From positions 186,001 to 250,000 of IMG/VR virus record IMGVR_UViG_3300044972_002389: a stretch of DNA of 64,000 nucleotides. One strand, 5' to 3'. Below the pieces are notes generated by a model, which worked only from the letters and a program-made list of their open reading frames with translations, had not been told where the DNA came from and did no database searches. Below are positions 14,495-62,354 of the stretch, one piece after another; within the stretch, counting starts at the first letter, position 1; the number at the start of each line of letters is the position of its first letter. The translations under genes and the position numbers were made by a program.

Positions 14495-14522
14495 TTGACA
14501 TGCCATCAAAAGCTGCTATATT
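14495..14522 (+). promoter_or_regulatory. early sigma70-type promoter
   Basis: TTGACA-16 bp-TATATT with TGC extension. Confidence 0.75.
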
Positions 14523-14548
14523 GGCGGGGTAGAGCACGGAGACAGTAG

Positions 14549-15808: not shown

Positions 15809-15811
15809 AAT

Positions 15812-16377: not shown

Positions 16378-16385
16378 ATTTAGGA

Positions 16386-16413
16386 TTGACCATCCCTTCA
16401 AACCTGCTACAAT
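16386..16413 (+). promoter_or_regulatory. early sigma70-type promoter
   Basis: TTGACC-16 bp-TACAAT with TGC extension. Confidence 0.75.
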
Positions 16414-16437
16414 GCAGGGGTAGGAAGGAGAGCTTAC

Positions 16438-26982: not shown

Positions 26983-27054
26983 GCAATTCTTTCCTCAAAA
27001 ATATTAGCCAAATATTTATGTGCTGGAAACCAGCTGGAATCTAAATACTAGATC

Positions 27055-35725: not shown

Positions 35726-35810
35726 TTATCTGTACTCCATAAATATAGATATATGCCGGTCACGACCCTGGCAGGTCCACCGGCTCTATCGCTTTAAGGG
35801 AGCAACAGCT

Positions 35811-36635
35811 ATGTCTATTTATCGTAATATCAAACCCTTTGGGTTTTATGTGTATGCCTACTTAAGAAAAACAACATCCAACAATGGTCCTGCAGGAACC
35901 CCTTATTATATTGGAAAAGGGACCGGCATACGTTACAAAGAAAACCACGGAACTCTACCTGTACCAAAAGAAGCATGGAGGATTGTTGTCCTTGAACAAG
36001 GATTAACTAATCTTGGTGCTGTTGCGCTCGAAAGAAGGCTGATACTCTGGTGGGGACGCCTGGATAATAACACAGGTATATTACACAATCGAACTGATGG
36101 CGGGGATGGGGCAGTTGGGAAGATAGTCTCTGATGAATCAAGAATGAAAGCAAGTGTTAACAATTGTGGCAAAAAAAGAAGTGCAGAAACAATCAAGAAC
36201 ATAAAAGATGCATTATCTCTTATCGACAGGTCAGGAGAGAATCATCCGTTATATGGCAAAAAGCATTCTGATGAAGCTAGATCTAAAATGAGCGAAGCTA
36301 AAAAAGGCAGGTCCTATGAAGAAATTTATGGCCCAAAAGCAGAAGAGATGCGAGCTGCACGCTCACAAAAATCTCGGGGACGAAGTCTGTCTGCTGAGAC
36401 CAAAGAAAAGATAAGTTTAGCAAATCGAGGCAAGAAAAAACCTGCAGGCTTTGGAGTCCGAATGTCCGCAGTAAGGTCTGGCCAAAAAGTCTCTGAAGAA
36501 ATTTTGAAGAAGAGAGCACAGATATTCGAAGCAACAAAACAAACTTGTGAACATTGCGGGAATATCTTTGGTTTAGCGAACTATATCAGATGGCATGGTC
36601 CTAATTGCAAAACTCAACCTAACCAACTACTATAG
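35811..36635 (+). CDS. GIY-YIG homing endonuclease with NUMOD3 repeats (Seg-like)
   Basis: FYVYAYLR...PYYIGKG..R, L.N.TDGGDG, GKKHSDEARSKMS; GGGAG RBS before ATG 35811; TAAATA at 35740. Confidence 0.88.
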   Translation: MSIYRNIKPFGFYVYAYLRKTTSNNGPAGTPYYIGKGTGIRYKENHGTLPVPKEAWRIVVLEQGLTNLGAVALERRLILWWGRLDNNTGILHNRTDGGDGAVGKIVSDESRMKASVNNCGKKRSAETIKNIKDALSLIDRSGENHPLYGKKHSDEARSKMSEAKKGRSYEEIYGPKAEEMRAARSQKSRGRSLSAETKEKISLANRGKKKPAGFGVRMSAVRSGQKVSEEILKKRAQIFEATKQTCEHCGNIFGLANYIRWHGPNCKTQPNQLL

Positions 36636-42117: not shown

Positions 42118-43875
42118 ATGGCTTGGAAAAAATATTTCACAACAGTACCGAGTCAAGCTAGACTCACTGCAAGACTAGCAGAAATCAACAAAGACAACAG
42201 TCAAGGTGCAACCACTACAAAATTCAGCAGTTATTTGCCTGAAGTCTATGCTGGTGCTCCAAACCGAGTTGAACGCTATGTGGCTTATGAACAAGCTGAT
42301 TTAGATAGTGAAATCAATCGCAGCTTGGACACTATTGCTGAGTTCTGCACACAAAACCAAAGTGATGATGAGCCTATTCCTTTCCGATTTATTTGGAAAG
42401 GTGATGTTACTGAAACTGAAACAGAACTTTTGGCCAGTGCACTTCAACAATGGTGCAGCATCAATAAACTGAATCAACGAATCTTCAAAATATTCCGTAA
42501 TACTGTCAAATACGGTGATCAATTTTTCGTCCGAGATCCAGAAACCTATGAGCTGTTGTGGGTAGATTCAGCCAAAGTGGAAAAAATCATTGTCAATGAG
42601 GCACAAGGCAAAAAAATTGAACAATATGTGATTAGAGATTTGGATTTCAATTTACAAAGTCTAGTGGCAACCAACCCTCTTGTGCATGATCAATACAGTT
42701 TCCCAGGAGGTTACCCTCGTAGTGCGAACCCAGCAGCTGGTGCAGGCAACATCAACTATGGACAGCCCACAACACCTGGCGGCCGTACCAGCAGATTTTA
42801 CAATCCAGCCAACAGCATGGCAATTGATGCCAACCACGTGGTGCATCTCAGTTTAAGTGAAGGCTTGGATCAATATTGGCCTTTTGGCACCAGCATCATT
42901 GAAGCAGTTTACAAAACTTACAAACAAAAAGACCTTTTGGAAGACTGCATTCTCATTTACCGTATTGTGCGTGCACCTGAGCGCAGAGTGTTTAAGATTG
43001 ACGTGGGTCAGCTGCAAGGTCAACGTGCCATGCAGTATGTTGAAAGAGTCAAAAACGAAATTTACCAAAGGCGACTCCCAAACCGCACAGGTGGTGGCTC
43101 AAGTATTATTGACAGCGCCTATAATCCCATAAGCATTACAGAAGATTTCTTCCTTGCAACCAACAGTGAACAACGCGGCACAACTATTGACACTTTGAAC
43201 GCTGGCGAAAACTTGGGCACTATTGACGACTTGAAATACTTCAACAACAAGTTGATGCGCGGGCTGGGTATTCCCAGCAGCTATTTGCCCACTGGACCAG
43301 ATGATGGCACAGCAGTTTACAACGATGGCAAAGTGGGAACAGCATTTATCCAAGAGTATAGATTCAACAAATATTGCCAAAGATTGCAGAACAGTCTTGC
43401 GCCAACATTGGATATGGAATTTAAATTGTTTTTGAAGTTCCGTGGCATTGAGGTACACAGCAGTTTGTTTGAGTTGGCATTTAACGTTCCACAAAGTTTC
43501 AGTCAATATCGCAACATGAGCATTGACACTGAGCGTGTTAACCTCTTCAGTTCAGCTATGAACAGTGATGCAAGAGCTTACATGAGCAAGAGATATGCGC
43601 TCAAGCGTTATCTAGGATGGACAGAAGAAGATATTCTGGAAAATGAGCGGATGTGGAAAGAAGAAAACAACGACAAAGTCAAAGGCAAGACTGGCACCAG
43701 CCCCATTGAAGACAGGGGTGTGGGACTGGGATCAATAGGGATACGCCCTTCACCAGAGCCTGATTTTGGTATGGGTGGACCTGAGATGCCTCCTGAAGCC
43801 CCGCTTGAGACACCGGGATTTGAAACACCTGAAGTTGCTCCAGGTGCTGAAACACCTCCAACTGAAACACAGTAA
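42118..43875 (+). CDS. portal protein (T4 gp20-like)
   Basis: LLEDCILIYRIVRAPERRVFKIDVG, EDFF, LKYFNNKLMRGLGIPSSYL, IQEYRF motifs; TAAATA at 42085. Confidence 0.95.
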   Translation: MAWKKYFTTVPSQARLTARLAEINKDNSQGATTTKFSSYLPEVYAGAPNRVERYVAYEQADLDSEINRSLDTIAEFCTQNQSDDEPIPFRFIWKGDVTETETELLASALQQWCSINKLNQRIFKIFRNTVKYGDQFFVRDPETYELLWVDSAKVEKIIVNEAQGKKIEQYVIRDLDFNLQSLVATNPLVHDQYSFPGGYPRSANPAAGAGNINYGQPTTPGGRTSRFYNPANSMAIDANHVVHLSLSEGLDQYWPFGTSIIEAVYKTYKQKDLLEDCILIYRIVRAPERRVFKIDVGQLQGQRAMQYVERVKNEIYQRRLPNRTGGGSSIIDSAYNPISITEDFFLATNSEQRGTTIDTLNAGENLGTIDDLKYFNNKLMRGLGIPSSYLPTGPDDGTAVYNDGKVGTAFIQEYRFNKYCQRLQNSLAPTLDMEFKLFLKFRGIEVHSSLFELAFNVPQSFSQYRNMSIDTERVNLFSSAMNSDARAYMSKRYALKRYLGWTEEDILENERMWKEENNDKVKGKTGTSPIEDRGVGLGSIGIRPSPEPDFGMGGPEMPPEAPLETPGFETPEVAPGAETPPTETQ

Positions 43876-43883
43876 ATATCAAG

Positions 43884-45860
43884 ATGAATACAAATATCAC
43901 AAAGACCAATGGCACTACGCTGGCAAGTATTCCGCCAGGACAGTATAACAGCACAGTTTCCAGTTTGATCCTATTTGGTAAGAATTTTGCCAATTACGGT
44001 ACTTATTTGAATGAAAATCTTGTTCATCTCATGGAAAATTTTGCCGACCAAAGTCCTCCACAAAGTCCCACACAAGGACAGCTTTGGTACAAAACCACAG
44101 ACAAACAAATGTATGTTTGGGAAGGCAGTGTTTGGAAACTGCTAAATGCAGAAAGCCTGCAACAGATTGCTGATGCAATTGTTAAAAATCGCATTTACGT
44201 TGCAGAAAGTGGTAATGATACCAACAGTGGACAAAGTTGGTATAGCGCCAAGCGAACTGTGAAAGCTGCATGTGCTGAAGCAGCTAGACAAATTGCCACA
44301 GGTGCATTCCGACCTGATCACACAGCTATATTAGTAGCAGCTGGTGACTATACTGAAGACTGTCCTATTGAAATTCCGCCAGGTGTCAGCATTATTGGCG
44401 ATAATCTTAGAGCTGTTTCCATACGACCAAGAGTCGCAACTACTGATGTATTTTATTTGAACAGCAAGTGTTATGTGTATGGCATTACTGTAAGAGATCA
44501 TAGATTGAATCCATCAGCATTGGATATAACTCCAGCAGGTTATGCCAACACAAGTGGAGTGAATACATCTGCACTGATCTCTACAACTCGACAAACAGGA
44601 TTTGCCTTTGGCTTTGCTCCAGGTGCAGACATCTTGGTCAGTCCCTATGTACAAAACTGTTCCAGCATTAGTGGCGATCCAGACACTGGATCAGGGATTT
44701 ACCCAGGTGGTGGCGGTGTGTTGATTGATCCCAGTGTTTTGGGACCCAATAATAGGATTCACAGCATTGTTATTGACGCATTTACTCAAATCAATCTTGG
44801 TGGTATCGGCGTCAAAGTCATTGGCAAAGGCTACATGCAGTTGGTGAGTTTTTTCGTTAACTTCTGCCAGTTTGGCTTGCTGTGCCTTGATGGTGGTCAC
44901 GTGACTGCATTGAACAGCAATTGCAGTTTTGGCAATTATGCTCTTTGGAGTCAAGGACACCGGTATCTTGAAACCACTGACAGCCCTGTGGCTGTAAATC
45001 AAACTTGGGCCACCAATGGTGTCAGTTCTGATTTTGTCACAACGGGTGGCACTTATGTTTTGCCAAATCAATTCAGTGACTTGGAAGTGCAATTTTTAGA
45101 CACTGCAACACCGTTGCTGCCCACTGTTGACTATACAATATCAAAAGGTGTAACAGCGGGTGGTTTGCCTTGTTCAGTTATTAGCTTGAAGTCTTTGCCC
45201 ATAGCTGGCCGGCAATTGCGAGCCAGGATCAAGTTTGGCTCCTTGATTGAAGCCAGCGGCTATACCATGAGCTATGCTGGTGCTGGCTTGGATTATGCCA
45301 AACTCAGCCCCAGTCAAGATGGCAGTGGCTACGCTGATCCCAACAAATATACTATTGCACTAGCTGGTGGACGTGTATTCCATACCACAACTGACGAAAG
45401 CGGAGACTTTTATGTGGGGGCTGTGACACCCAATCCAGCGTTTCAAGTTGGCGGATTGACTATTGCCAATGGCGGAGGCAGCTATAACGTAGGGGATACA
45501 TTGAATTTCATTACCCCAGCCAACGTTAACAGCACCTATGCTGTGCCCACAACACTTAAGGTTTTGAGTGTGTCCAGTGGTGTTATTACAAGTGTTGCGA
45601 TTCTTATTCCTGGATACTATCTACTTTCGGCGCCAGGTAGCACAACAATTGGCAGTTTGCCCACAAATCCCATTAGTGCAACGTCAACAAGTGGTGGTGG
45701 ATCGTCAGCTACTTTTAACTTCGTGTGGGAGAAACCTCCTGCCAGACCCAGTTTCCGCATAAATCAGAGACGAGGTGCTATTGATGGACGCAGCTTTTAT
45801 CAAAGCATCTTTGGATTTATGACTCCCTTTATACTTGCTCTTTCACGCAAAGGATCTTAA
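43884..45860 (+). CDS. virion structural protein (tail fibre/baseplate) with beta-helix domain
   Basis: L.L.GKN..NYG...NEN.VHLMENFA...P..P..GQLWY head; IYVA..G.D.N.G; GDNLR; SPYVQNCS; DAFTQIN. Confidence 0.75.
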   Translation: MNTNITKTNGTTLASIPPGQYNSTVSSLILFGKNFANYGTYLNENLVHLMENFADQSPPQSPTQGQLWYKTTDKQMYVWEGSVWKLLNAESLQQIADAIVKNRIYVAESGNDTNSGQSWYSAKRTVKAACAEAARQIATGAFRPDHTAILVAAGDYTEDCPIEIPPGVSIIGDNLRAVSIRPRVATTDVFYLNSKCYVYGITVRDHRLNPSALDITPAGYANTSGVNTSALISTTRQTGFAFGFAPGADILVSPYVQNCSSISGDPDTGSGIYPGGGGVLIDPSVLGPNNRIHSIVIDAFTQINLGGIGVKVIGKGYMQLVSFFVNFCQFGLLCLDGGHVTALNSNCSFGNYALWSQGHRYLETTDSPVAVNQTWATNGVSSDFVTTGGTYVLPNQFSDLEVQFLDTATPLLPTVDYTISKGVTAGGLPCSVISLKSLPIAGRQLRARIKFGSLIEASGYTMSYAGAGLDYAKLSPSQDGSGYADPNKYTIALAGGRVFHTTTDESGDFYVGAVTPNPAFQVGGLTIANGGGSYNVGDTLNFITPANVNSTYAVPTTLKVLSVSSGVITSVAILIPGYYLLSAPGSTTIGSLPTNPISATSTSGGGSSATFNFVWEKPPARPSFRINQRRGAIDGRSFYQSIFGFMTPFILALSRKGS

Positions 45861-45863
45861 CAT

Positions 45864-46334
45864 ATGCCTGCACCTATTTTTAACTTTCGTAATGTCAAAG
45901 TTAGAGTTACAAATGATCAACCCACAACCATTTACAAAGTTTCAAGTTACGATCAAACTATTCCCAACACAACATTGCCTCCAGGTGTAGATCCAACTGA
46001 AGTCAGTATTGTGTTGTTGACTGTTCAATGCAGCAACATTACAGGCAGTCCCAGCAGTCCTACTCTACGGAAAACCATCAATCTCAGTGTATGGATTGAT
46101 AATCCTCCTGATCCAGCCTATCTGCCCACTGGTAGACGTTACCTTGTTAACAATTACACAATTATTCCCAACAACGCTTTTGACCCCTTGAATGGCAATT
46201 TGATCATGAGCAGCGGAGATACCTTGGTTGTACAAGTAAGTAATCCTCCAGCAGAAACAACCAATACCAGTACTGATAACTGTGTTGATGTTGTTGTAAG
46301 CCTATTGGAAATTGCCAATGCGACTGCCAATTAA
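45864..46334 (+). CDS. hypothetical virion protein
   Basis: In the late operon; beta-rich. Confidence 0.65.
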   Translation: MPAPIFNFRNVKVRVTNDQPTTIYKVSSYDQTIPNTTLPPGVDPTEVSIVLLTVQCSNITGSPSSPTLRKTINLSVWIDNPPDPAYLPTGRRYLVNNYTIIPNNAFDPLNGNLIMSSGDTLVVQVSNPPAETTNTSTDNCVDVVVSLLEIANATAN

Positions 46335-46343
46335 GGACTAAGC

Positions 46344-46898
46344 ATGCCAAAGCTACTTGATAACCGCGTTGTTGGATCAGCTGATCTTATTGATGTGCAA
46401 CTGGAAGGTGTTCCAGCTGGCTTGGTATTGAAAGTCTCTGCCAACGGAGAGCAATTCTTTTTTGGGCAACAAATTGGACCACCTGGACCTCCAGGTATTA
46501 TTGGCACAGCAGGGAGCCCTGGCCCTCAAGGACCACCAGGAGATGACACATTTGTTGTTGGTCCACCTGGGCCTCCTGGTCCTCCTGGTATGGGAGGGGG
46601 AATTCCTGGAAGCCCAGGAGTTCAAGGACCTCCAGGTCCAAACAAAGGCCCGCCAGGCGATCAAGGACCCAATGGTGATACTGGGCCAACAGGACCACAA
46701 ATAACTGATCAACAACATTATGCAGCAGTTTTCAGCACTGCTGGTCCACAAACATGGACAGCGCCACCTGGTGTTAGGCGTGCTAGAATAACACTGATCG
46801 GTGGAGGGGCTGGGGGAACGTTGGGCATTTATGTGCCTCCAGGTTCAGTTCCACCTACAGAAGGTGGCCCTGGGGCTGGCGGCGGAGGACTATTTTGA
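46344..46898 (+). CDS. collagen-like fibre protein, N-terminal part
   Basis: MPKLLDNR head, Gly-X-Y repeats, start of glycine-rich domain (WTAPPGV...ITLIGGG). Confidence 0.8.
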
Positions 46899-47024
46899 TT
46901 ACCATAAGTAGTAACAGAGTCGTAGCATAAGACAGCCATTGTCTATTATAGGGATTTAAGGCTATGCAACGCTGGGACTAAACAGTTGGGGTGTAACAAT
47001 GGATAGCTATAGAGGATTACTGTT

Positions 47025-47405
47025 ATGAGTGGAAGCATTGGCGGATGGTTTACTGGCCTGGCTGGAGGCTCTGGAGCAATTTTACGGCTGTGGGTAGATA
47101 TAATCCCAAATGCCACCTATAATCTTCAAGTTGGTGCTGGAGGTCAAGGGCAAACATCTGCCACAGTTCCTCCAACAAATGGAGGCAACACTACTATGAG
47201 CGGACCAGGTGGAGTATTTTATTCTGCTGGAGGCGGCGTAGCAGTGAGTGGAGGCAATGCAGGCACGACACCAAACATAATTTGGCCCTTGGTACCTGGA
47301 TCATATCTCCATGGTTTGGCAGGTGCAGGAGGCGATCCCACTAAGCCAAATCCTGCAGGGTCAAATGGCTCAGCTGGCCTTATTTTGATTGAATGGATTA
47401 ACTAA
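47025..47405 (+). CDS. collagen-like fibre protein, C-terminal part of the glycine-rich domain
   Basis: Same frame as 46344-46898; ends GLILIEW like its paralogs; GAGGA RBS. Confidence 0.75.
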
Positions 47406-48334
47406 TGCCTCGCTTACTTGATAACCGTATTGTTGGCCCATCACGAGACGTTTTGACTACAACATTATATGGGGCACCTGCCGGGTATGTGTTACGAGTA
47501 TCCCCCACAGGAGATACACTTGTGGTCACAACCCCAGGTGGCCCACTGGGTCCTCCAGGTCCTCCTGGCCCCGCTGGACTAGCAGGGCCTGTTGGGCCAC
47601 CTGGAGCCAGCAGTGCATTAGTAGGTGATACAGGTCCCCCAGGTCCTCCTGGTCCTGCAGGAGGACCTCCTGGTCCTGCAGGTTTAACTGGACCAACGGG
47701 ACCAGGCGGGGGACCAGTGGGTCCTCCAGGACCGCCTGGAATTACTGGACCTATTGGGCCGCCTAGTGGCAATCAAGATATAAATGCAGCACAACTTGTG
47801 TCTCCTGGTGTATGGACAGCACCCCCAGGTGTGTTTTCTGTTAAGCTGACACTTATTGGAGCAGGGGGAGGCGGTAGTTTGCCCGTGAGTGGGGGTAGTC
47901 CAATTGAATTTGACAATAGTGCTCAATCTGGTTGGACAATACAAGGTATTCCTGGAAGCAGTGGTGGCGTAAATGAACAATGGGTAACTGTGCAGGGCGG
48001 ACAAAATTACAATGTCACAATAGGAGTTGGGGGTAGTGGAGCTATAATATCTGGAGGTGGGGTGTACCCCAATGAAAATAATATTCCAACATATTACCCA
48101 CAATATATATACGTTCCACCAAGTCCTGGCACCCCTACAACATGGAGTGGTCCAGGCAGTCCCACAGTCGTAGCAGGCGGCGGCCCATCAGCAGGCACCC
48201 CCGCAGGAATTCTGGGTACTCCTGGAGTGAATTCCCCCTTAAGTGTGGGATTGGGTGTGGCAACAGTCTATGGATTTGGGGCAGGAGCAGAACAACAGGG
48301 CGGCCCTGGTGCAGCACTTATAGAATGGATTTAA
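47405..48334 (+). CDS. collagen-like fibre protein with glycine-rich C-terminal domain
   Basis: MPRLLDNR head, GPP repeats, ends GAALIEW. Confidence 0.85.
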
Positions 48335-48337
48335 AAG

Positions 48338-49273
48338 ATGCCAAAACTTCTTGATAAGCGTATAATAGGCGGGTCTGCAGACGTCCTGAATACAATACTG
48401 ATTGGTGTGCCTGCTGGGTTGCCCCTTATAGTGGCGCCAACAGGCGCCGCTTTGCTGTTGGGTCCAGCCACAAGTTTTCCAGGCGTAAGGGGGCCTACAG
48501 GGCCTACAGGATTGGGAGGAGCGCCAGGATTTGGTGGATTTCCTGCCCCTCCAGGTGTAAAAGGTGCCACTGGGTCTGCTGGGCAGCCTGGCCCATTAGC
48601 AGGACCACCAGGCACACTAGGGGCAACCGGGCCAGTAGGTGGCGCTGGCCCGACCGGAGACCCAGGGGCAACAGGAACTCTTGGTTTTCCAGGACCCCAA
48701 GGGACAGGCCAAAAATTAGCAGTAGCTGGCTTTTTGTCTCCCAGTACATGGGCTGTGCCTGCTACAACTACTAATGTAAAAATCACAACTGTGGGCGGAG
48801 GAGGAGCAGGTGGTTGGGGAGCAATTTATACAACACAGGATTACACAGGTGCTGACGGCGGCTATGCTGATGGTCCCACTATAAAACTAATTGGAGGCAA
48901 GGGTGGACCAGGTGCCGCTATAGAAACATGGATACCGGTCACGGCAGGCAGTAATTTGCAAGTAATAGTTGGAGGTGGTGGGGCTGCTAACATTAGTAAT
49001 TCTGGAAACCCTGGCACGCCCAGCCAACTTTTGGATCAAAGTGGAATAGCCCTTGTTACAGCAGGTGGTGGAAGCGGCGGCCTCAATGCCAACATCTTCA
49101 CACCCGGTGCCAATGGTGCGAGAGGAACTGCCACCAGCATAGGCCCGCTGGTTTACTTGAATGCTGACTTAGGCCTTAGGTTTGGTTACGGGGGCGTGGG
49201 CCGAGACGATACATCAGCATCAGGTGGACAACCAGGTGCAGTTCTTATAGAATATGTTGCTGTAGGTCCTTAA
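48338..49273 (+). CDS. collagen-like fibre protein with glycine-rich C-terminal domain
   Basis: MPKLLDKR head, Gly-X-Y repeats, ends GAVLIEY. Confidence 0.85.
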
Positions 49274-49878
49274 CGCAGTGCTGGACCAGTTAACCAAGCC
49301 ACCAAAGTGCGGCGTAACCCACTTGTAACGGGTGTTACTCTATGCAGAACAAAGCTGGGAAAAACGGCTACAAGGCCTAGATCCTTGCTAATGGTTTGTG
49401 GATCAGCGCCTAACTTAACTTGTAGATTGCCACCTTCATACTCACAGGGATCGCTCAATTGTAAAACTACACTGAGTTTTCGAGGACCGTGGTTTGTGGA
49501 AGTGATGCCACTGTCAATATGCCAGGTGTAGTGACCCTCATCATCCCCGTAGTATTCAGTGTATTGCAGGTGTTCACCAAATCCCCACAAATCAAAGCGA
49601 AAATGCTGGCCATTTAAATTACGAACAATATTACCCAAGCGTTGATAAATCCAATCAGTGTCAGGACTGGCTTCAATCCAACTGGTTTTGCTTTTGCGTA
49701 TTTGTTCATAATTTTGAGCGGGATCAAATCCACCAATTACCGCTTTTCCTGGCTGTCTAGCCTGCCCTAGTTGAATTATCTTTTTTATATCATCTCCTGA
49801 AAATCCATCTTTCCAGGTTGCTACGTTTGCCTCACCAGCGCCAAAGCTGGGACTTGGTAAAAATTGATAAATTGACAC
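49270..49878 (-). CDS. 2OG-Fe(II) oxygenase (prolyl 4-hydroxylase / PKHD-type)
   Basis: [30 protein letters not shown]; GGAG RBS before GTG 49878. Confidence 0.88.
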
Positions 49879-49940
49879 TCTGTTGCTCCCTTTGATTTGA
49901 ACTATACAAGGGCCTTTGTTTCTCTGCAATAAATAGATTT

Positions 49941-50168
49941 ATGAGAGCAATGGATTTAGATAGTGCTGGCTATTACAGCCCAGACCAAGATCATTATACT
50001 ATGCAAAATCAGTATGACCCGCGTCGACCCAAGATTACAATCGCACATTTAAATCAAATGAAAAGAATGCGTAGTGCCAAGAAATTGGAAAATCTTGTGC
50101 GCAGAGATCTTTTGGGCCTGTTGTATGGCGCTCCCTCTGCTGAAGGCGGCGGAATGCCAGGCATGTAG
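49941..50168 (+). CDS. small late head-assembly-region protein
   Basis: TAAATA at 49930; RRPK.T..HLN.MK.MR...YG motif. Confidence 0.7.
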   Translation: MRAMDLDSAGYYSPDQDHYTMQNQYDPRRPKITIAHLNQMKRMRSAKKLENLVRRDLLGLLYGAPSAEGGGMPGM

Positions 50169-50264
50169 TCTAAAATTGCCTTATTTTCCATATAAATCCA
50201 AGTTATTCTTCAACTCCTTCTAAATAAACACAGAGTCTATCAACTTTACCAAAGGAGACAAACT

Positions 50265-51626
50265 ATGGCTAATAGCAAGCTGTTGAAGGTAATGGATTAC
50301 CTTATCAACGAGCAAGAAGACAAGGCTCGTGACCTGTTGCACCAAATCTTCATTGAGAAGGCACGTGCAATTCACGAGGAAATGCTAAGTGACGACGAGC
50401 ATGAAATGGACAGGGACGAGGGCAGAAATCTCGGAGATGACATTGAATTTCACAAAGAAGAAATTGAGAATGAAGAGCATTATGGCGACGGCACAATGGA
50501 AGATGTTGACCTCGATGACGCGGTTGAAGATCTCACAGTAAGTGCTGGCGATGATGAAGATGCTGACGATGTTGATGTTGACGTGGAAGACGATGACATA
50601 GACATGGACGCTGAAGACGACATGGACGATGAAGACGACATGGACGATGAAGAAATGGATGCTGATGAAGCTGAAATGGATGCAGACATGGACCACGACG
50701 AGGAAGCTGAAGGCGAGCGTCTAAAAGACATTGAGCAAGCAATTGAAGAGTTGACTGCTGAATTTGAAGCTATGAAGGCTGAACTACATGGTGAACATGG
50801 TGATGCAGAGGGAGATAAAATGCCCCTGCAGGAAATGGCAGATTCGGGCACTACGCCTGGTGGTAAACAGTACAAAATTAGCGGCGATTTTGAAACCGTG
50901 ACTGTTAATGGAACTTCTTACCCAATCCGCAAACTGAGTGGTCAAGGGGACAACCCCGACTACGTAATAGATGACATCCATATTGGTCAAACATATCAGG
51001 ACATGCCACACCCTGACGCGGATGAGGAAGACTATGAGGAAGAATATGAAGTCTGGACAGAAGCACCAGGACAAGCAGATAACACCCTACACGTTGGTAC
51101 GTGGGATGAGTGCTGGAACTTTTTAATTGATCAACTAGGAAGTGAAGACCATTCGCGTTTGAAAAGACGCCTACAGCGCGATGCTAGCGGTGGTGGCATG
51201 AGAGAAGGCTGGATGGACAACACTGACGACCTTGATGAAGACTATGATGATCTTGATGAAGCCATTGCCCTCGATACAGTTCATGTTGATCTCAAGAAAG
51301 TTGGCGAAGTTGGCTCAGGAAAGTTTTCTCGTAGTGATGTAAGCAAGCATAGCCCAGTGCCCAAAGGCGTTCAAAGCCCTGTTCCAGGTGCCAAGCCAGT
51401 TGTGACAGGCAAGGGATCAAAGGCTGATGGATATCATCTTCAATCTGCCCCCACAAGTGCCAGTATGAACTTGTCCAACCGTCGCAAGAAGGCTAGTGAA
51501 GACATGACTCATGTCAGCAAGGAAGGCAGCACAAAGGCCATGTTGAACAAAGATCGTTCAGAAGGTTTTGGCGCCGCCAACGTTCGCAGCCCACTGGGCA
51601 GCACCGGCACAACACCAAAGAAGTAA
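50265..51626 (+). CDS. acidic prohead core protein
   Basis: LINE...KA..L.H.IFIEKAR.I.E head, D/E-rich linker, upstream of the protease; TAAATA at 50221; AAGGAG RBS. Confidence 0.7.
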   Translation: MANSKLLKVMDYLINEQEDKARDLLHQIFIEKARAIHEEMLSDDEHEMDRDEGRNLGDDIEFHKEEIENEEHYGDGTMEDVDLDDAVEDLTVSAGDDEDADDVDVDVEDDDIDMDAEDDMDDEDDMDDEEMDADEAEMDADMDHDEEAEGERLKDIEQAIEELTAEFEAMKAELHGEHGDAEGDKMPLQEMADSGTTPGGKQYKISGDFETVTVNGTSYPIRKLSGQGDNPDYVIDDIHIGQTYQDMPHPDADEEDYEEEYEVWTEAPGQADNTLHVGTWDECWNFLIDQLGSEDHSRLKRRLQRDASGGGMREGWMDNTDDLDEDYDDLDEAIALDTVHVDLKKVGEVGSGKFSRSDVSKHSPVPKGVQSPVPGAKPVVTGKGSKADGYHLQSAPTSASMNLSNRRKKASEDMTHVSKEGSTKAMLNKDRSEGFGAANVRSPLGSTGTTPKK

Positions 51627-54892: not shown

Positions 54893-54930
54893 AAGATAAA
54901 ACCCCGGGATCTCTCCCGGGGTTTTATCTT
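54893..54930. terminator. bidirectional intrinsic terminator
   Basis: AAGATAAAACCCCGGGA / TCCCGGGGTTTTATCTT 17-bp inverted repeat between convergent genes. Confidence 0.85.
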
Positions 54931-55783
54931 AAAACAATGTGCAACCTTGCAGTAACAATTGCTCTCTCCAATCATCAGCCAATGCACCAGGAACTTTGAT
55001 GCGGAATATTTGGTACCCTTGCGCAATAGCGTTTGCAGTCTTGCGTGCATCTCGTGCTTGAGTCTTAGCGAGCCCTTCAAGTTTAATAGATTCTGCATCA
55101 TCTTTCTTACCATATAAATTCTTGTTGTAATGATATGGTCCATCTATTTCAACTAATATTTTTTCATTTATTACGAAGTCATAAAGAAACAATCCGACAC
55201 GTACAAATTTGCGATATATCAGCCCTGATTCAATAAGGATTTGTTCAAACTGTAGCTCCGGTTTAGTATTGAATAATTTCATTCCAAGCTTGTCTGGATT
55301 TTCCGCCATAAACTTCAGTCTACCCCGACTGTAATTTTCCTTTTGTTCATCAGTAGCCTTGCTGCCGCGCCGTGCAGCCCACATCTGTTCAACCTTTTGT
55401 TGCACTAGTGCAGGATCTCTAGTTTGTGCTATGTGACTCATTCTCTTTTTGAATTCGTCACTACGTTTGTAGCCTTTTTGAGGACTGCCACCATTACTCT
55501 CTAAAAATTTCTGGTAACTTTCTTTTTGCCGCTCCACAGCTTCTCTAGGCATAATTTTACCCTTGTTACCAACACCAATTTTTTGTTTGGTTTCTTCGCT
55601 GTGTTTTCTGCCAGTCCGCACTTGTTTTTGTTTGGCACGCAACTCCTCTGTCCATGGCTTCATTGCGCTAACAGGATTCCCAGGAAATTTTTCTTGATAC
55701 TCTTGACTTGATAAACCATGGCTTTTGAGGTGCTTACCTACCAAGGTGCCCAATTGTCTTTTGCAGATTTGACATTCGATCAT
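54929..55783 (-). CDS. putative homing endonuclease (C2H2 finger + NUMOD3 + Vsr-like domain)
   Basis: CQIC...HLKSH; GRKHSEETKQKI; YDF....LVEIDGPYH; TAAATA at 55813-55818 (minus). Confidence 0.78.
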   Translation of the reverse strand: MIECQICKRQLGTLVGKHLKSHGLSSQEYQEKFPGNPVSAMKPWTEELRAKQKQVRTGRKHSEETKQKIGVGNKGKIMPREAVERQKESYQKFLESNGGSPQKGYKRSDEFKKRMSHIAQTRDPALVQQKVEQMWAARRGSKATDEQKENYSRGRLKFMAENPDKLGMKLFNTKPELQFEQILIESGLIYRKFVRVGLFLYDFVINEKILVEIDGPYHYNKNLYGKKDDAESIKLEGLAKTQARDARKTANAIAQGYQIFRIKVPGALADDWREQLLLQGCTLF

Positions 55784-57640: not shown

Positions 57641-58675
57641 ATGGAACGGCTACCCGACCTCAAAACAGAAGTTTTGCCATTCAATGGTTTGAATCTACAC
57701 ATAAACAAAGCTGACTTCTGGAGCAGCAAGCTACGTCTCCAAAATGACAATTGGTTGTTCAAGAAATGGTGGAAAAGCTGGAAGTCACTGGGACTGGAAG
57801 GACCAGGACTGCTGTTGGATATTGGTGCAAACTATGGTGTTGCCAGCTGGGAATTTTTGAGTCAAAGCTTCTGTAGTCAAACAATTATGTTTGAACCCAT
57901 TCAAGAAAATTGTGAATGCATAATGCGTAGCTATGCAGGCAAGGAAAGCATTTATCAAATCCACAACCAGGCAGTGAGTCAACAAAGTGGAGAAATCAGC
58001 TTTCAATACAATCCCAAACAAACTGGCACCAGCCATATTGTGGGATCAGAGGGCGGAAACCGCACTGTGAAAACTGTTTGCATTGACAGCCTTGATCTTC
58101 CCAAAATCAAGCTCATGAAAATTGATGTTGAAGGTCATGAGCTTGATGTTCTCAAAGGTGCGGCTGCCCGTATTCAACAAGACCAACCTTGGATATTCTT
58201 TGAATGCAATCACAATAATGCAGTGGAACTGCAAAAAGTCACTAATGTAATCAATTGGTTCTTGGAACATGATTATGTTCCTATTAGTAGTAGCTATCAT
58301 CAAATTTTGACTGAAACTGATATCAGGGCCAGCAGCCTCGCAAGCAACAGCATCCTGGCAGGTGTGAACGATCTATTGGCTGTGCCTCGAGCCCTGCTGC
58401 CCAGCAACAGTGAGAAAGTCCATCTCTACAAAGTGTATCAGGAGCAATTGACAAAATCTGGAAAAGTCAGCTTTTGGAAAGATAGGGTGCCTTGGTTTCA
58501 GTTGAACGCTAGGGAAATGGCCAAGCTAGACAAACTGCCGGAGGAGGGAGAAACTTTGTCTCCCAGCCGCAGTAACAAAGTTTATACGCGAGAGGGAGAT
58601 TTGGTTGTTTTTACAGAAAGGTTTTTTCAACAGTTTCCAGAATATCAAAACGCATTGAGTGATATCTTTACATGA
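57641..58675 (+). CDS. FkbM-family SAM-dependent methyltransferase
   Basis: LDIGANYG, FEP, MKIDVEGHE..VLKGA motifs. Confidence 0.88.
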   Translation: MERLPDLKTEVLPFNGLNLHINKADFWSSKLRLQNDNWLFKKWWKSWKSLGLEGPGLLLDIGANYGVASWEFLSQSFCSQTIMFEPIQENCECIMRSYAGKESIYQIHNQAVSQQSGEISFQYNPKQTGTSHIVGSEGGNRTVKTVCIDSLDLPKIKLMKIDVEGHELDVLKGAAARIQQDQPWIFFECNHNNAVELQKVTNVINWFLEHDYVPISSSYHQILTETDIRASSLASNSILAGVNDLLAVPRALLPSNSEKVHLYKVYQEQLTKSGKVSFWKDRVPWFQLNAREMAKLDKLPEEGETLSPSRSNKVYTREGDLVVFTERFFQQFPEYQNALSDIFT

Positions 58676-59697: not shown

Positions 59698-60462
59698 CTA
59701 ACAAGGTAAGTAGGAAATGTATTTTTTTACACCCAATTGGCACATCAATTCTAATATTCTGTCAGCATTTGGGCTTTTTTGAATACTCAATAAGTTTCTG
59801 ATAACTCTCTCGTCATCTTCTTGGTCAGCTAACAAGCTAATGTGTTTCTTGATCCACTCAAGGTCTGTTTTCACCATAAGTGGTTGTGGAAACATAGTCA
59901 AGGCTTTGAAGTATCGCATGATTTGGTTGGGATCGTCCTTGATGTTGGATTTAGTATCAGGCAACATTCGGATACGACTGTGCTTCAAATCGGCGTATCC
60001 GCCTTGATAATCCCAAATGTGGCCATGTAAATCCATACTCATGCTGTTGATTGTCAGGTCCCGCATTTCACTGTCTGTAGCCCAGTTTTTGGCTTTTTTG
60101 AGAAAAGGTCGAGCACCTTTCAACTGTATCCTGTAACCCAAACTGGTTATTTCCACTTTGTTTTTGTCCCCGTTCTGCCTAAAAACGGCTTTGATGGTGC
60201 CATGTTTGATGCCCTGTGTTTCTGCCTCAATTCCATATAGGTTCAAGAGAAACAACGTTTCACTAGGATCTGCGTCCACTACCAAATCAATATCCCGTGG
60301 TTTTTTATGTAGCAACATGTCTCTCACTGCACCACCTACAATCCGAGTGGACACATGATGATCATGAAGAATTTTCAAAATTTGCCGCGTATTGGGATCA
60401 ATAAATTGGTCCATTATTTGCATATCAACTTGTGCAACTGGCTTTGTGGGATACTGTTTCAT
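59698..60462 (-). CDS. cca: tRNA nucleotidyltransferase (CCA-adding / poly(A) polymerase family)
   Basis: VGGAVRD.LL...P.DID, EITS, D..MRDLTINSM, D..GG..DL; start moved to ATG 60462 after TAAATA at 60468-60473. Confidence 0.82.
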   Translation of the reverse strand: MKQYPTKPVAQVDMQIMDQFIDPNTRQILKILHDHHVSTRIVGGAVRDMLLHKKPRDIDLVVDADPSETLFLLNLYGIEAETQGIKHGTIKAVFRQNGDKNKVEITSLGYRIQLKGARPFLKKAKNWATDSEMRDLTINSMSMDLHGHIWDYQGGYADLKHSRIRMLPDTKSNIKDDPNQIMRYFKALTMFPQPLMVKTDLEWIKKHISLLADQEDDERVIRNLLSIQKSPNADRILELMCQLGVKKYISYLPC

Positions 60463-60470
60463 AGGATTAT

Positions 60471-62354
60471 TTAGAGGCTGAGACGCCATAAGCCCTGTGT
60501 ATACGTGCTCTTGGGAAAAGCTTTCCATTCTTGATTCGTCCAAAGAAACCATTTTTGACTGTATTGATTCAACACCAATGTCTGCAAAGGGCTGCTGCTG
60601 TCAAAGGCCAAAACCCATTGTGAGCCGTTGTATTCAATTATATCGTTGGCAATAACAGGGTAAATTACTTGCACAAAATCTCCAATTTGTGCAACAGAGT
60701 CTCCTGACAAAACCACTTGGTATTGAAGTGCATTCAATTGTACAATTTGCACAACACTTGCAGTTTGTGTAATGCCTGACCCAAATAGGATTTGCATGCT
60801 GCGGTTCAGGCTTAACTGGGCTTGATCAACAGGTTCTATTACCAGTTCGTTGGTGCTGACCCTACCAACTACCAGTGCCTGCACATTTGGTATTGCCTGA
60901 ACATTGCCCCACGCGCCGCTTTGAAATGCAATTTCATTTGTCAACAAATATCTTTGACCAAATCTTTCCTCAGTCAAGCCAGAGCCAGGGTAAGTGCGCT
61001 GTGGATCAATAACAGCAGTGATGGGAGGAAGTTGATCTCCGGGCCAACTGGAAAGTTTGCCTTTCCAAATCAAATAGTTTTGGTTGGTGGGATGAAAATC
61101 AATATATCCCACAATGTCAGAGTCTCTGTTGTCAAGATCATCTGTTGACAACAGCCTTATTTGGCTAGCGTTTTCTTGGAAACTGCTTTGGGGTTTTACT
61201 GCGCCATATTTGTCCAAGAGCCTCCACCAAGCCAAGGTTCCGCCCTTGTATATGGTGGGCTGAAATCCCAAATCTTGGATTGGTGTGCCTTCCACGTTTT
61301 CCAAGACAATATCTCCACCAGTCATGTTCCAAAATTCAATTTGCTGATTCAAATTAAAAACTGCGTTCAAACTGGGTTCAACAGTTCGCACTCGAATCAA
61401 GTTGATTAAATCATCAATACTTGTGTTGGGTATTGTTATAGCTTGCCCATTGAACTTGAATGTAGTACCAGGTGTCAATACAGGATTTTTTCTGCCCAAC
61501 ACACGGGTCGGCAATGTCTGAGGATCAATCGTACTACCAGAAGGACTTTGTAGGCTGATTTCCCAGGTGTTTTCACCTGCATTGGCCATGGCAATACAGG
61601 CATCCAGAGGAGTTGTTAACACTCTACTCAGCAAAGACTGTTCGGTCCACTCCATTGTGTTGGGATCATATTCACCTTCACGTATATTTGTTACAATCTC
61701 TTGAATTATCTTTTGTAGTTTTACTTTGGCTGGTGGATTTATGAAAATTGGCACTTTGTATTCAACAGTACAAACATCAATGGGGTTTTCTGTACCAATG
61801 GGAATACTTCGACTGCTCCAAGTGATGTTTGTGGGCTCAAGGGTTGTAATAGCTGTCCAGTCCAAGGGATTGTTCGATGTTTGAATATCAATCATTCCAT
61901 TATAGAGTACTTGGGTTTGCTCAATAAGCTCTTCTTTTTGGTTAAGGTTACTGGTCCAAAAGTCTACGTTGAAGGTCAGGTCAAAAGGTACAGCCATATA
62001 ACGTTCAACAGTGCTTCTGTTACCTTGTGTACCTAGGTAGCGACTATTTTCTCCGTCGTATTCACGTTCAATAACGTTTTGTGTTGAAACAAGGCTTGGA
62101 GCATGACGCCGGTTGGGTGCCAAACTCATGGCTGTCAAATAGACTGAGATGAAAGGGGCTGTTGGTAATTTGTTTTCACTGTTGGCATTTGTGATGGTTT
62201 CTGCCAAACGTGAAGGGTCACCATAGCGACAAGGCACTCGCCTCAGCTTCGGGGTGCCGTCGCTGTTGATACCCATGCTTACACTGAAGTTGCTGAATGC
62301 TCGTATGACTTGAAGTCTATACTGCCGTAGCTGTTGGTTGTACCAATATTCCAT
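60471..62354 (-). CDS. tail terminator / sheath stabiliser (T4 gp15-like) with long C-terminal extension
   Basis: Q.R.Y..Q..R.FSNF, VP.RYGD, VPFDL...VD.WT.N..QK..L.EQ, PPAKVK. Confidence 0.8.
   Translation of the reverse strand: MEYWYNQQLRQYRLQVIRAFSNFSVSMGINSDGTPKLRRVPCRYGDPSRLAETITNANSENKLPTAPFISVYLTAMSLAPNRRHAPSLVSTQNVIEREYDGENSRYLGTQGNRSTVERYMAVPFDLTFNVDFWTSNLNQKEELIEQTQVLYNGMIDIQTSNNPLDWTAITTLEPTNITWSSRSIPIGTENPIDVCTVEYKVPIFINPPAKVKLQKIIQEIVTNIREGEYDPNTMEWTEQSLLSRVLTTPLDACIAMANAGENTWEISLQSPSGSTIDPQTLPTRVLGRKNPVLTPGTTFKFNGQAITIPNTSIDDLINLIRVRTVEPSLNAVFNLNQQIEFWNMTGGDIVLENVEGTPIQDLGFQPTIYKGGTLAWWRLLDKYGAVKPQSSFQENASQIRLLSTDDLDNRDSDIVGYIDFHPTNQNYLIWKGKLSSWPGDQLPPITAVIDPQRTYPGSGLTEERFGQRYLLTNEIAFQSGAWGNVQAIPNVQALVVGRVSTNELVIEPVDQAQLSLNRSMQILFGSGITQTASVVQIVQLNALQYQVVLSGDSVAQIGDFVQVIYPVIANDIIEYNGSQWVLAFDSSSPLQTLVLNQYSQKWFLWTNQEWKAFPKSTYTQGLWRLSL

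What the first reader, a model, noticed from the sequence alone, without database searches (positions are those of the whole stretch)
46344..49878. GPP-rich collagen fibre triplet with an adjacent prolyl-hydroxylase-like oxygenase
Seen: three paralogs share an MP[KR]LLD[NK]R head and collagen tracts, the first two unusually rich in Gly-Pro-Pro (Pro in the Y position, as in animal collagen). A 2OG-Fe(II) oxygenase gene overlaps the last stop codon. Known: Y-position hydroxyproline stabilises triple helices, and most prokaryotic collagens lack it. Inferred: the phage may hydroxylate, and perhaps glycosylate, its own fibres, and three paralogs could form a heterotrimer. Such oxygenases are common in large phages, so the adjacency may be incidental.
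Basis: partly seen in the sequence, partly recalled or inferred. Interest (0 to 1): 0.6.

Follow-up and report, generated by a model that had tools for sequence, protein, structure and literature searches.

The report
Phage collagen fibres with prolyl hydroxylase
A giant lake phage carries three related collagen-stalked receptor-binding fibre genes next to a prolyl-hydroxylase-type enzyme gene, and this enzyme type sits beside Gly-X-Pro repeat fibre genes in many unrelated phages, so phages probably hydroxylate proline in their own fibres as animals do in collagen.

Summary
P1, P2 and P3 share the MP[KR]LLD[NK]R head and a 75-76-residue interrupted Gly-X-Y stalk. P1 and P2 carry 8 and 9 GPP triplets (Y-position Pro 0.42-0.43). 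A convergent 2OG-Fe(II) oxygenase shares a TTAA stop with P3.

The split is conserved in three related contigs and in independent lake metagenomes.

The C-terminal domain of the fibres folds like the TNF-like plus glycine-rich receptor-binding tip of cyanophage Pam3 tail fibre gp24 (Z 13.9). The oxygenase is the only PF13640 gene in the 328.6-kb phage record. Its Fe and 2OG ligands are invariant, and its nearest solved folds are protein prolyl hydroxylases, including the PBCV-1 collagen P4H.

The adjacency is probably not incidental:
- Near 63 dereplicated homologues, 29 of 31 Y-Pro Gly-X-Y ORFs lie within 2 kb, on the same strand. Other collagen types are spread evenly.
- In the reverse test, 62% of GNPGN[AP]GNPG loci carry the oxygenase, against 10% of GPT-type loci.

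Self-hydroxylation of X-Pro-Gly in the fibres is the best-supported reading, but no chemistry was tested. Glycosylation is unsupported and a heterotrimer remains open.

The parts
43884..45860 (+). 658-aa fibre- or baseplate-like protein directly after the portal gene. It is a conserved upstream member of the module; its role was not resolved.
   Evidence: PHROG tail-fibre and baseplate-wedge families, E 1.8e-42 to 5e-14. Conserved at 74-75% identity in the same position in L086 and L087.
45864..46334 (+). 156-aa conserved companion protein of unknown function. An adaptor or chaperone role is only a guess.
   Evidence: No Pfam or PHROG hit. Present in the same position in L086, L087, the 7804-bp contig and L088.
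46344..46898 (+). Fibre paralog P1, part a: MPKLLDNR head, GPP-rich collagen stalk (8 GPP) and the first strands and GGGAGG motif of the glycine-rich domain.
   Evidence: Pfam Collagen E 8e-4, below threshold. PHROG tail fibre hits.
46899..47024 (.). 126-nt non-coding spacer that splits P1. It has four further in-frame stops and an AGAGGA Shine-Dalgarno site before the ATG at 47025.
   Evidence: No Rfam match. Fold z-score -0.4. Present without indels in independent lake metagenome contigs, and enriched in substitutions in a variant strain. Relatives have 20-39-nt spacers at the same point.
47025..47405 (+). Fibre paralog P1, part b: the remainder of the TNF-like/glycine-rich domain, ending LILIEWIN.
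   Evidence: Aligns to the C-terminal halves of P2 and P3. Hit by the C-domain HMM at E 4.5e-7. Conserved as a separate ORF of 124-132 aa in relatives.
47405..48334 (+). Fibre paralog P2: head, GPP-rich collagen stalk (9 GPP, Y-Pro 0.43) and a C-terminal TNF-like plus glycine-rich receptor-binding domain.
   Evidence: Orthologues at 55-95% identity keep the GPP pattern. Model residues 124-309 match Pam3 fibre 7ypx (Z 13.9), Bxb1 tail tip (Z 11.8) and ALK GRD (Z about 9).
48338..49273 (+). Fibre paralog P3: the same architecture with a Pro-poorer collagen stalk (1 GPP, Y-Pro 0.25) and a different break register.
   Evidence: PF21722 Gly_rich_2 at 22 bits against a cut-off of 24.3, and Collagen at E 2.9e-4.
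49270..49878 (-). 202-aa 2OG-Fe(II) oxygenase of the prolyl-hydroxylase clade. It is convergent with P3 and shares the TTAA stop. It is the proposed fibre prolyl hydroxylase.
   Evidence: PF13640 at 53.4 bits. It is the only PF13640 gene in the 328.6-kb record. H120, D122, H179 and R189 are invariant. GTG start with SD. Model pLDDT 86. Nearest folds: PPHD Z 19.4, TaPHD 19.2, PBCV-1 collagen P4H 17.9.

Best explanation
The region is a fibre module of a freshwater jumbo T4-like phage. It encodes three paralogous fibre proteins, the first made as two polypeptides. Each has a short N-terminal attachment head, a short interrupted collagen-type stalk and a Pam3-gp24-like TNF-like/glycine-rich receptor-binding tip.

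The adjacent 202-residue 2OG-Fe(II) oxygenase is a protein prolyl hydroxylase. Its most likely substrate is the newly made, still unfolded fibre chain. It would convert Pro in X-Pro-Gly (the Y position of Gly-X-Y) to hydroxyproline, using Fe(II), 2-oxoglutarate and O2. That would stabilise stalks of only 4-8 uninterrupted triplets, which would otherwise be marginal triple helices.

What is shown: the gene anatomy, the fold classes, the catalytic residues and the conserved gene linkage. What is inferred: the substrate, the modified residue and the stabilising effect.
For: 1. Enzyme class.
- PF13640 scores above its cut-off.
- The HxD...H triad and the 2OG-binding Arg are invariant across 21 homologues.
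- The closest solved sequences are PKHD-type hydroxylases.
- The closest folds are all protein prolyl hydroxylases: P. putida PPHD Z 19.4, Trichoplax PHD 19.2, PBCV-1 collagen P4H 17.9, PHD2 and OGFOD1 16.6, Chlamydomonas P4H 15.8, human C-P4H-II 15.2 and B. anthracis P4H 15.0. Apart from PiuC (17.4) and an uncharacterised Burkholderia 2OG oxygenase (16.1), both of unknown substrate, other 2OG enzymes score 15 or less.

2. Substrate candidates.
- P1 and P2 have Y-Pro of 0.42-0.43. The genome's other collagen ORFs have 0.01-0.02.
- P2 orthologues keep the GPP pattern.
- X-Pro-Gly is the classical P4H recognition motif (PMC8968730).

3. Linkage in the lineage.
- This is the only PF13640 gene in 328.6 kb, and it abuts the fibres.
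- The arrangement is kept in three relatives.
- A relative with only 54% oxygenase identity (L088) has a single head-plus-GPP-collagen gene with a different C-terminal domain, still next to the oxygenase.

4. Linkage outside the lineage.
- In 63 dereplicated viral loci with 39-55% identical oxygenases, no other window gene is shared. Yet 29 of 31 Y-Pro Gly-X-Y ORFs lie within 2 kb, on the same strand. That is 14.8 and 9.8 per 100 kb, against about 0.3 beyond 2 kb. X-Pro and other types are spread evenly.
- ORFs with at least 3 G-x-P-G motifs number 35 of 379 within 2.5 kb and 2 of 449 beyond (odds ratio 22.7, p 2e-10).

5. Reverse test.
- Of 73 loci found only by a DNA pattern encoding GNPGN[AP]GNPG, 45 (62%) have the oxygenase within 1.9 kb, on the same strand. 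After dereplication this is 38 of 65.
- Of 79 GPTGPTGPTG control loci, 8 (10%) have it (odds ratio 14, p 2e-11).

6. Fibre identity. The P2 C-domain matches the Pam3 tail fibre tip (PMC9608196).
Against: - No chemistry was done: there is no hydroxyproline measurement and no enzyme assay.
- The single best fold match is PPHD, whose substrate is EF-Tu, not collagen.
- The protein scores far below the NCBIfam equivalog cut-offs for YbiX/PiuC, so its exact subfamily is undefined.
- In this lineage the oxygenase is convergent with the fibre genes and so is not co-transcribed with them. In most other loci it is on the same strand.
- Only about 60% of loci show the pair in either direction, and many loci are truncated.
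- The neighbours elsewhere may be distant glycine-rich-domain relatives of these fibres. Part of the linkage could therefore be an inherited cassette rather than independent convergence.
- P3 is poor in Y-Pro.
- The complex prediction gave no answer.
Confidence: 0.55

Rival explanations
1. The oxygenase is a host-directed or general auxiliary enzyme. It might hydroxylate host EF-Tu as PPHD does, or a ribosomal protein as OGFOD1/Tpa1 does, or it might sense 2OG or oxygen. On this reading its position beside the fibres has no functional meaning.
For: - The top fold match is PPHD bound to EF-Tu (Z 19.4), and OGFOD1 scores Z 16.6.
- 2OG-Fe(II) oxygenases are very common in cyanomyophages, in varied contexts such as next to UvsW or denV.
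- Viral P4HA is usually treated as an auxiliary metabolic gene of cryptic role (PMC9301287).
- The gene is convergent with the fibre genes.
Against: - The two-way, type-specific linkage with Gly-X-Pro repeat genes across loci that share no other gene.
- It is the only PF13640 gene in the genome, and it abuts the only Y-Pro-rich collagens.
- The linkage survives a swap of the fibre's C-terminal domain.
Confidence: 0.2
2. The oxygenase does modify the fibres, but not at Y-position proline. It could be a prolyl 3-hydroxylase acting on X-position Pro. It could also hydroxylate Lys, Asn or Asp, or act within the glycine-rich tip rather than the stalk.
For: - The neighbours in other loci are rich in Asn at the X position (0.3-0.46).
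- Mimivirus lysyl hydroxylase and LH3 are also fold neighbours (Z 14.1 and 13.3).
- More distant oxygenases sit beside Y-Lys-bearing collagens.
- B. anthracis P4H hydroxylates both X and Y prolines (PMC8968730).
Against: - The only composition feature shared by the window's GPP tracts and the GNP-type neighbours is Pro followed by Gly. Asn and Lys are nearly absent from the tracts of P1 and P2.
- Prolyl hydroxylases score higher than the lysyl hydroxylases.
Confidence: 0.15
3. The three paralogs form an obligate 1:1:1 heterotrimeric fibre, as the C1q A/B/C chains do.
For: - The three genes lie in tandem in a fixed order in all close relatives.
- They share the head and the overall stalk length (75-76 residues).
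- P1 and P2 have identical break registers.
Against: - P3 has a 3-residue first break where P1 and P2 have 4, and it lacks the third break.
- The relative L088 manages with a single gene.
- Pam3 gp24, with the same tip fold, is a homotrimer (PMC9608196).
- The tips are only about 40% identical, which fits three fibres of different specificity.
Confidence: 0.2

Closest known systems
PBCV-1 viral collagen prolyl 4-hydroxylase (vCPH, PDB 5c5t) with proline-rich viral proteins
   Same: It is a virus-encoded small monomeric 2OG-Fe(II) prolyl hydroxylase. It is a fold neighbour (Z 17.9, 166 residues aligned), and its virus encodes proline-rich repeat proteins as presumed substrates.
   Different: Its host is eukaryotic (an algal virus). 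It shares only 18% identity. No adjacent substrate gene is defined there. Here the enzyme lies in a bacteriophage, abutting Gly-Pro-Pro fibres.
Pseudomonas putida PPHD (PDB 4iw3) and HIF prolyl hydroxylases (PHD2, TaPHD)
   Same: They are the best structural matches (Z 19.4 and 19.2). They have the same HxD...H plus Arg chemistry and are of similar size.
   Different: Their substrates are EF-Tu or HIF loops, not Gly-X-Y repeats. They show no linkage to fibre genes.
PKHD-type hydroxylases YbiX / PiuC / Sbal_3634 (PDB 3dkq, 9qn0)
   Same: They are the closest by sequence among solved structures (E 1.2e-10) and are in the same Pfam family.
   Different: The window protein scores 64.6 bits against NCBIfam cut-offs of 143 to 399, so it is not an equivalog. 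Those proteins are chromosomal and iron-uptake-associated, and their substrate is unknown.
Bacillus anthracis P4H with the collagen-like BclA
   Same: It is a prokaryotic prolyl hydroxylase able to hydroxylate (PPG)n peptides, in an organism with collagen-like surface filaments (PMC8968730). It is a fold neighbour at Z 15.0.
   Different: It is a bacterial enzyme, not a phage one. BclA is GPT-rich (Y = Thr) and is not known to be hydroxylated. The enzyme and substrate genes are not adjacent.
Cyanophage Pam3 tail fibre gp24 (PDB 7ypx)
   Same: The C-terminal TNF-like plus glycine-rich (GGGGxGG) receptor-binding tip matches at Z 13.9 over 144 residues.
   Different: Pam3 gp24 has an alpha-helical shaft and a separate chaperone, gp25. 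Here the shaft is a collagen-type stalk behind a beta-rich head, there are three paralogs, and one of them is split into two ORFs.
Mimivirus collagen-like proteins with L230 lysyl hydroxylase/glycosyltransferase (PDB 6ax6)
   Same: The virus encodes both collagen-like fibre proteins and the 2OG oxygenase that modifies them. The oxygenase is a fold neighbour at Z 14.1.
   Different: It acts on Lys rather than Pro, is fused to a glycosyltransferase, and belongs to a giant eukaryotic virus.

Membership tests
2OG-Fe(II) oxygenase, P4H-type (Pfam PF13640) | Profile score above the curated cut-off | tested here: met
   53.4 bits against a cut-off of 27. It is the only such gene in the genome, at 55.3 bits.
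2OG-Fe(II) oxygenase, P4H-type (Pfam PF13640) | HxD...H iron triad and a basic residue binding the C5 carboxylate of 2OG | tested here: met
   H120, D122, H179 and R189 are invariant in 21 homologues.
Protein prolyl hydroxylases (collagen P4H, PHD, PPHD) | Double-stranded beta-helix fold closest to known prolyl hydroxylases | tested here: met
   Model pLDDT is 86. Nine of the eleven best representative chains are protein prolyl hydroxylases (Z 15.2-19.4); the other two are PiuC and an uncharacterised Burkholderia oxygenase.
Protein prolyl hydroxylases (collagen P4H, PHD, PPHD) | Hydroxylation of peptidyl proline, here X-Pro-Gly | not testable with these tools
   This needs an enzyme assay or mass spectrometry. 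The complex prediction gave no answer.
PKHD-type hydroxylase YbiX/PiuC (NCBIfam PRK05467 equivalogs) | Score above the equivalog cut-off | tested here: not met
   Best score 64.6 bits against a cut-off of 143. The others score 35-46 against 180-399.
Collagen triple-helix repeat proteins (Pfam PF01391) | Gly at every third residue over long runs, with a profile score above the cut-off | tested here: inconclusive
   The Gly-X-Y runs are 4-12 triplets long with 1-4-residue breaks. Pfam scores are 19.6 (P1a) and 21.0 (P3) against a cut-off of 27.2, and P2 gives no hit.
Collagen triple-helix repeat proteins (Pfam PF01391) | Formation of a trimeric triple helix, nucleated by a flanking trimerisation domain | not testable with these tools
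   The flanking tip has the fold of a trimeric fibre tip (PMC9608196). The monomer model of the stalk has pLDDT below 40.
Pam3 gp24-type TNF-like/glycine-rich fibre tip (Pfam PF21722 Gly_rich_2) | Fold match over the whole domain, with GGGGxGG-type glycine-rich motifs | tested here: met
   7ypx Z 13.9 (144 residues aligned), 9d93_Qa Z 11.8, ALK GRD Z about 9. The next unrelated hit scores Z 4.0. The motifs are GAGGGGS, GGGGAGG and GGGAGG.
Pam3 gp24-type TNF-like/glycine-rich fibre tip (Pfam PF21722 Gly_rich_2) | Profile score above the curated cut-off | tested here: not met
   P3 scores 22.0 bits against a cut-off of 24.3. P1 and P2 give no hit.

The most novel reading that the evidence does not exclude
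Aquatic phages may carry a widespread, so far undescribed two-gene cassette: a prolyl-hydroxylase-type oxygenase plus a receptor-binding fibre built of Gly-X-Pro repeats. In that case hydroxyproline would be a regular constituent of phage virions. The abundant viral 'P4HA' gene, now counted as a cryptic auxiliary metabolic gene, would in fact be a maturation enzyme for structural proteins. The window's phage would be a variant with animal-like Gly-Pro-Pro stalks, three paralogous fibres and one fibre gene permanently split into two polypeptides.
Probability: 0.45. Interest if true: 0.75.

Novelty: new variant of a known kind. Interest (0 to 1): 0.62.

Why it matters
Hydroxyproline-stabilised collagen is regarded as an animal feature. 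Prokaryotic and phage collagens are described as lacking it and as using Thr or Gln at the Y position instead (PMC8968730).

Viral P4H-type genes are among the most frequent 'auxiliary metabolic genes' in aquatic viromes. Their role has been called cryptic (PMC9301287).

A specific, two-way linkage between this oxygenase clade and Gly-X-Pro fibre genes gives that role a concrete and testable answer. It also names a defined enzyme-substrate pair for making hydroxylated recombinant collagen in bacteria. If correct, a class of 'metabolic' viral genes would be reclassified as structural-maturation genes. Finally, the conserved split of one fibre gene within a folded domain is a natural example of a two-chain receptor-binding tip.

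Tried and rejected
- Megablast of 42118-50200 against isolated phages found no match. There is no close cultured relative: the best oxygenase identities in isolates are 33-39%.
- Rfam on 46000-50300 gave only chance-level miRNA hits. The P1 spacer has no significant RNA structure (z -0.4). An intron, a ribozyme or a bypass element is therefore not supported, and the relatives have ordinary stop/SD/ATG junctions.
- HMMs of the window fibres' head and C-domain found nothing in the 80 oxygenase loci. tblastn with the other window genes found nothing there either. The wider linkage is therefore not explained by detectable synteny.
- The search for related loci with a GNP-repeat fibre returned nothing, probably because of low-complexity filtering. 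It was replaced by DNA-pattern scans.
- Complex prediction with the oxygenase and P2 residues 40-125 gave no answer (score 0.00, controls not run). This is not evidence either way.
- Literature searches for phage prolyl hydroxylase with collagen or tail fibres, and for PiuC function, found nothing relevant beyond PMC9301287 and PMC8968730. Absence from the held library does not prove absence from the literature.
- The large profile search (search of protein representatives) was not used. The word search and the family scans were sufficient.
Full report
CONTEXT

The window is bases 186001-250000 of a 328.6-kb IMG/VR viral record that CheckV rates 77% complete. It is a T4-like phage. A gp20-type portal lies at 42118-43875 (PF07230, E 8e-101). 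A T4 baseplate protein, a gp15-like sheath stabiliser and the gp21/gp22/gp23 head genes lie nearby. The finding's stretch is held by lake-water metagenomes from 20 studies, so this is a freshwater phage. No isolated phage matches it at the DNA level.

THE OBSERVATION

- Three ORFs start [16 protein letters not shown] and MPKLLDKR at 46344, 47405 and 48338. They are 40-51% identical.
- Each has a 75-76-residue interrupted Gly-X-Y tract.
- P1 and P2 have 8 and 9 GPP triplets, with Pro at 0.42-0.43 of Y positions. P3 has 1 GPP and Y-Pro of 0.25.
- The other collagen-like ORFs of the same genome have Y-Pro of 0.01-0.02. In 106 database collagen-like hits retrieved with the GPP-rich query itself, the median Y-Pro is 0.15, and only 8 reach 0.40.
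- P2 orthologues at 55-95% identity keep the GPP pattern.
- The oxygenase occupies 49270-49878 on the minus strand, with a GTG start and a good Shine-Dalgarno site. Homologues are about 200 residues long, which fits this start rather than the upstream TTG. Its stop and the stop of P3 share TTAA at 49270-49273.

P1 is two ORFs. After residue 184 comes a TGA and then a 126-nt spacer with four more in-frame stops. A Shine-Dalgarno site and an ATG at 47025 then open a 126-residue ORF that aligns to the C-terminal half of P2 and P3.

This is not an assembly error and not a recent pseudogene.
- Contigs from four other lake runs cover 46300-49950 with no indels. One is a 26-kb contig of a variant strain with 42 substitutions, and it keeps the stops.
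- Three related contigs (fibre identity 43-85%) have the same split at the same point in the domain. Their spacers are 20-39 nt long, with their own SD and ATG.
- The spacer has no Rfam match and no significant fold.

P1 is therefore a conserved two-chain fibre protein.

WHAT THE FIBRES ARE

PHROG scans hit tail-fibre families. P3 scores just below the threshold of PF21722, the glycine-rich domain. An AlphaFold model of P2 built on nine homologues is confident only for residues 124-309. That domain matches:
- the cyanophage Pam3 tail fibre gp24 (7ypx, Z 13.9, 144 residues aligned);
- a mycobacteriophage Bxb1 tail-tip protein (Z 11.8);
- the ALK glycine-rich domains (Z about 9).

The next, unrelated hit scores Z 4.0. 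In Pam3 this TNF-like plus glycine-rich unit is the trimeric receptor-binding tip (PMC9608196). The proteins are therefore receptor-binding fibres: head, collagen-type stalk, glycine-rich tip. Where on the virion they attach is not shown.

WHAT THE OXYGENASE IS

- It is the only PF13640 gene in the 328.6-kb record.
- H120, D122, H179 and R189 are invariant.
- By sequence, the closest solved proteins are PKHD-type hydroxylases. It falls far short of the NCBIfam equivalog cut-offs, so it is not a YbiX/PiuC orthologue.
- The model has pLDDT 86. Against 48,161 representative chains, nine of the eleven best matches are protein prolyl hydroxylases. They are P. putida PPHD (Z 19.4), Trichoplax PHD (19.2), PBCV-1 collagen P4H (17.9), Dictyostelium PHD, PHD2 and OGFOD1 (all 16.6), Chlamydomonas P4H (15.8), P4H-TM (15.6) and human C-P4H-II (15.2). 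The other two are PiuC (17.4) and an uncharacterised Burkholderia oxygenase (16.1). B. anthracis P4H follows at 15.0.

'Prolyl-hydroxylase-like' is justified. 'Collagen-type' cannot be decided from the fold.

IS THE ADJACENCY INCIDENTAL?

Four lines of evidence argue against it.

1. Lineage conservation. The order portal, 650-aa protein, 150-aa protein, P1a, P1b, P2, P3, convergent oxygenase, 75-aa protein, acidic protein, gp21, gp22, gp23 is kept in three relatives. A 340-kb relative with only 54% oxygenase identity has one 218-residue protein with the same head, 7 GPPG motifs and an unrelated C-terminal domain. It still lies tail-to-tail with the oxygenase.

2. Forward test. A profile scan of IMG/VR gave at least 589 oxygenase relatives, and the best 80 loci were fetched. 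Apart from one weak portal match and one weak match to the 658-aa protein, none shares another window gene by tblastn, and none shares the fibre head or tip by HMM.
   - After dereplication to 63 loci, Gly-X-Y ORFs with Pro at Y but not at X cluster beside the oxygenase. Typical repeats are GNPGNAGNPG, with Y-Pro of 0.08-0.42.
   - 29 of 31 lie within 2 kb, all on the same strand. The density is 14.8 and 9.8 per 100 kb, against about 0.3 beyond 2 kb.
   - The usual phage collagen type (X = Pro, Y = Thr or Gln) and other types are spread evenly over 0-10 kb.
   - ORFs with at least three G-x-P-G motifs number 35 of 379 within 2.5 kb and 2 of 449 beyond (odds ratio 22.7, p 2e-10). They occur in 23 of 40 loci that have full flanks.

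3. Reverse test with a control. A DNA pattern encoding GNPGN[AP]GNPG retrieved 80 loci, and 73 have the motif in frame. Of these, 45 (62%) carry the oxygenase within 1.9 kb on the same strand.
   - A control pattern encoding GPTGPTGPTG gave 8 of 79 (10%), with weaker oxygenase scores (odds ratio 14, p 2e-11).
   - After dereplication the figures are 38 of 65 against 8 of 79. With full flanks they are 11 of 17 against 1 of 16.

4. Cassette contents. The genes between fibre and oxygenase in those loci are often further PF13640 oxygenases, and once a PrmA-like protein methyltransferase. In one 190-kb relative, a 477-residue fibre with 23 G-x-P-G motifs follows the baseplate and tail-fibre genes and precedes two oxygenases.

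One caveat applies. These neighbours begin and end like glycine-rich-domain proteins. Some of the linkage may therefore be an old cassette that has been inherited, rather than repeated independent association.

MECHANISM

The one sequence feature shared by the window's GPP stalks and the GNP-type neighbours is Pro followed by Gly at the Y position. That is the classical prolyl 4-hydroxylase site (PMC8968730).

The most likely reading is that the enzyme hydroxylates Y-position Pro on nascent, unfolded fibre chains. This would raise the stability of stalks that have only 4-8 uninterrupted triplets. I put this at about 0.55.

The rivals are:
- a host-directed or general role, about 0.2 (the top fold hit is the EF-Tu hydroxylase PPHD);
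- modification of the fibres at another residue, about 0.15.

The convergent orientation here means the enzyme and the fibres are not co-transcribed. The enzyme only needs to be present when the fibres are made.

THE OTHER CLAIMS

- Glycosylation. No glycosyltransferase lies among the neighbours scanned. GT2 genes lie at about 15-16, 31 and 47 kb of the record, and a GT25 gene at about 124 kb. All are outside the window. The claim is not supported.
- Heterotrimer. P1 and P2 share exactly the same break register, but P3 does not. One gene suffices in L088, and Pam3 gp24 is a homotrimer. The question is open, and a heterotrimer is not required.

NOVELTY

Virus-encoded prolyl and lysyl hydroxylases with collagen-like substrates are known from giant eukaryotic viruses (PBCV-1, Mimivirus). 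A bacterial P4H is known from B. anthracis.

For bacteriophages I found no description of the linkage in the held library. One paper states that the viral use of P4H 'remains cryptic' (PMC9301287). I rate this a new variant of a known kind.

The complex prediction gave no answer. It is reported only as a step that was tried.

Noticed in passing
window 46874-47105: In a variant strain (a 26-kb contig of run X16), 22 of the 40 listed substitutions across 46300-49950 fall in this 230-nt stretch around the P1a/P1b junction. Eight of them are in the 126-nt spacer. The in-frame stops are kept.
   Followed up: partly
G000 (own genome) 2-1144 and 26193-28235, outside the window: There are two further collagen-like ORFs. 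One, at the contig end, has X-Pro of 0.84-1.0. The other is 681 aa with 145 triplets and almost no Pro. GT2 glycosyltransferase genes lie nearby at about 15-16 kb and 31.5 kb, and a GT25-family gene lies at 123750-124193.
   Followed up: no
L209 (Synechococcus phage S-CAM9, NC_031922.1) 1-5546; L221-L278: In a cultured cyanomyophage, a tail fibre with a GQK/GPT collagen tract (Y-Lys 0.37) lies 0.4 kb upstream of two tandem 2OG oxygenases. Four of the eight GPT-type control loci that carry a more distant oxygenase also have Y-Lys of 0.15-0.23. This may point to phage lysyl hydroxylases.
   Followed up: partly
L006 8059-8691; L021 5732-6382; L048 5552-6133; L053 5588-6181: Between the Gly-X-Pro fibre gene and the oxygenase, other phages carry second and third PF13640 oxygenases. 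L006 also has a PrmA/lysine-methyltransferase-like gene. This suggests larger fibre-modification cassettes.
   Followed up: partly
window 35709-36635 and 54929-55783: Two NUMOD3-motif ORFs look like homing endonucleases. The second lies directly after the major capsid gene on the opposite strand.
   Followed up: no
L088 13453-16896: The portal gene of the 340-kb relative is 1147 aa long and has an intein-splicing domain hit between two portal halves. The window's portal has none.
   Followed up: no
window 57641-58675 and 59698-60552: An FkbM-family methyltransferase and a PolyA-polymerase/CCA-adding head-domain protein lie next to the gp15-like gene.
   Followed up: no
window 50265-51626: A 453-aa, extremely acidic (Asp/Glu-rich) protein with no family hit lies between the 75-aa gene that follows the oxygenase and the prohead protease. 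It is conserved in relatives at 70-87% identity. It may be a prohead core or scaffold component.
   Followed up: no
window 1-18000: G+C is 0.48-0.54 here, against 0.39-0.45 in much of the rest of the window. The cause was not examined.
   Followed up: no
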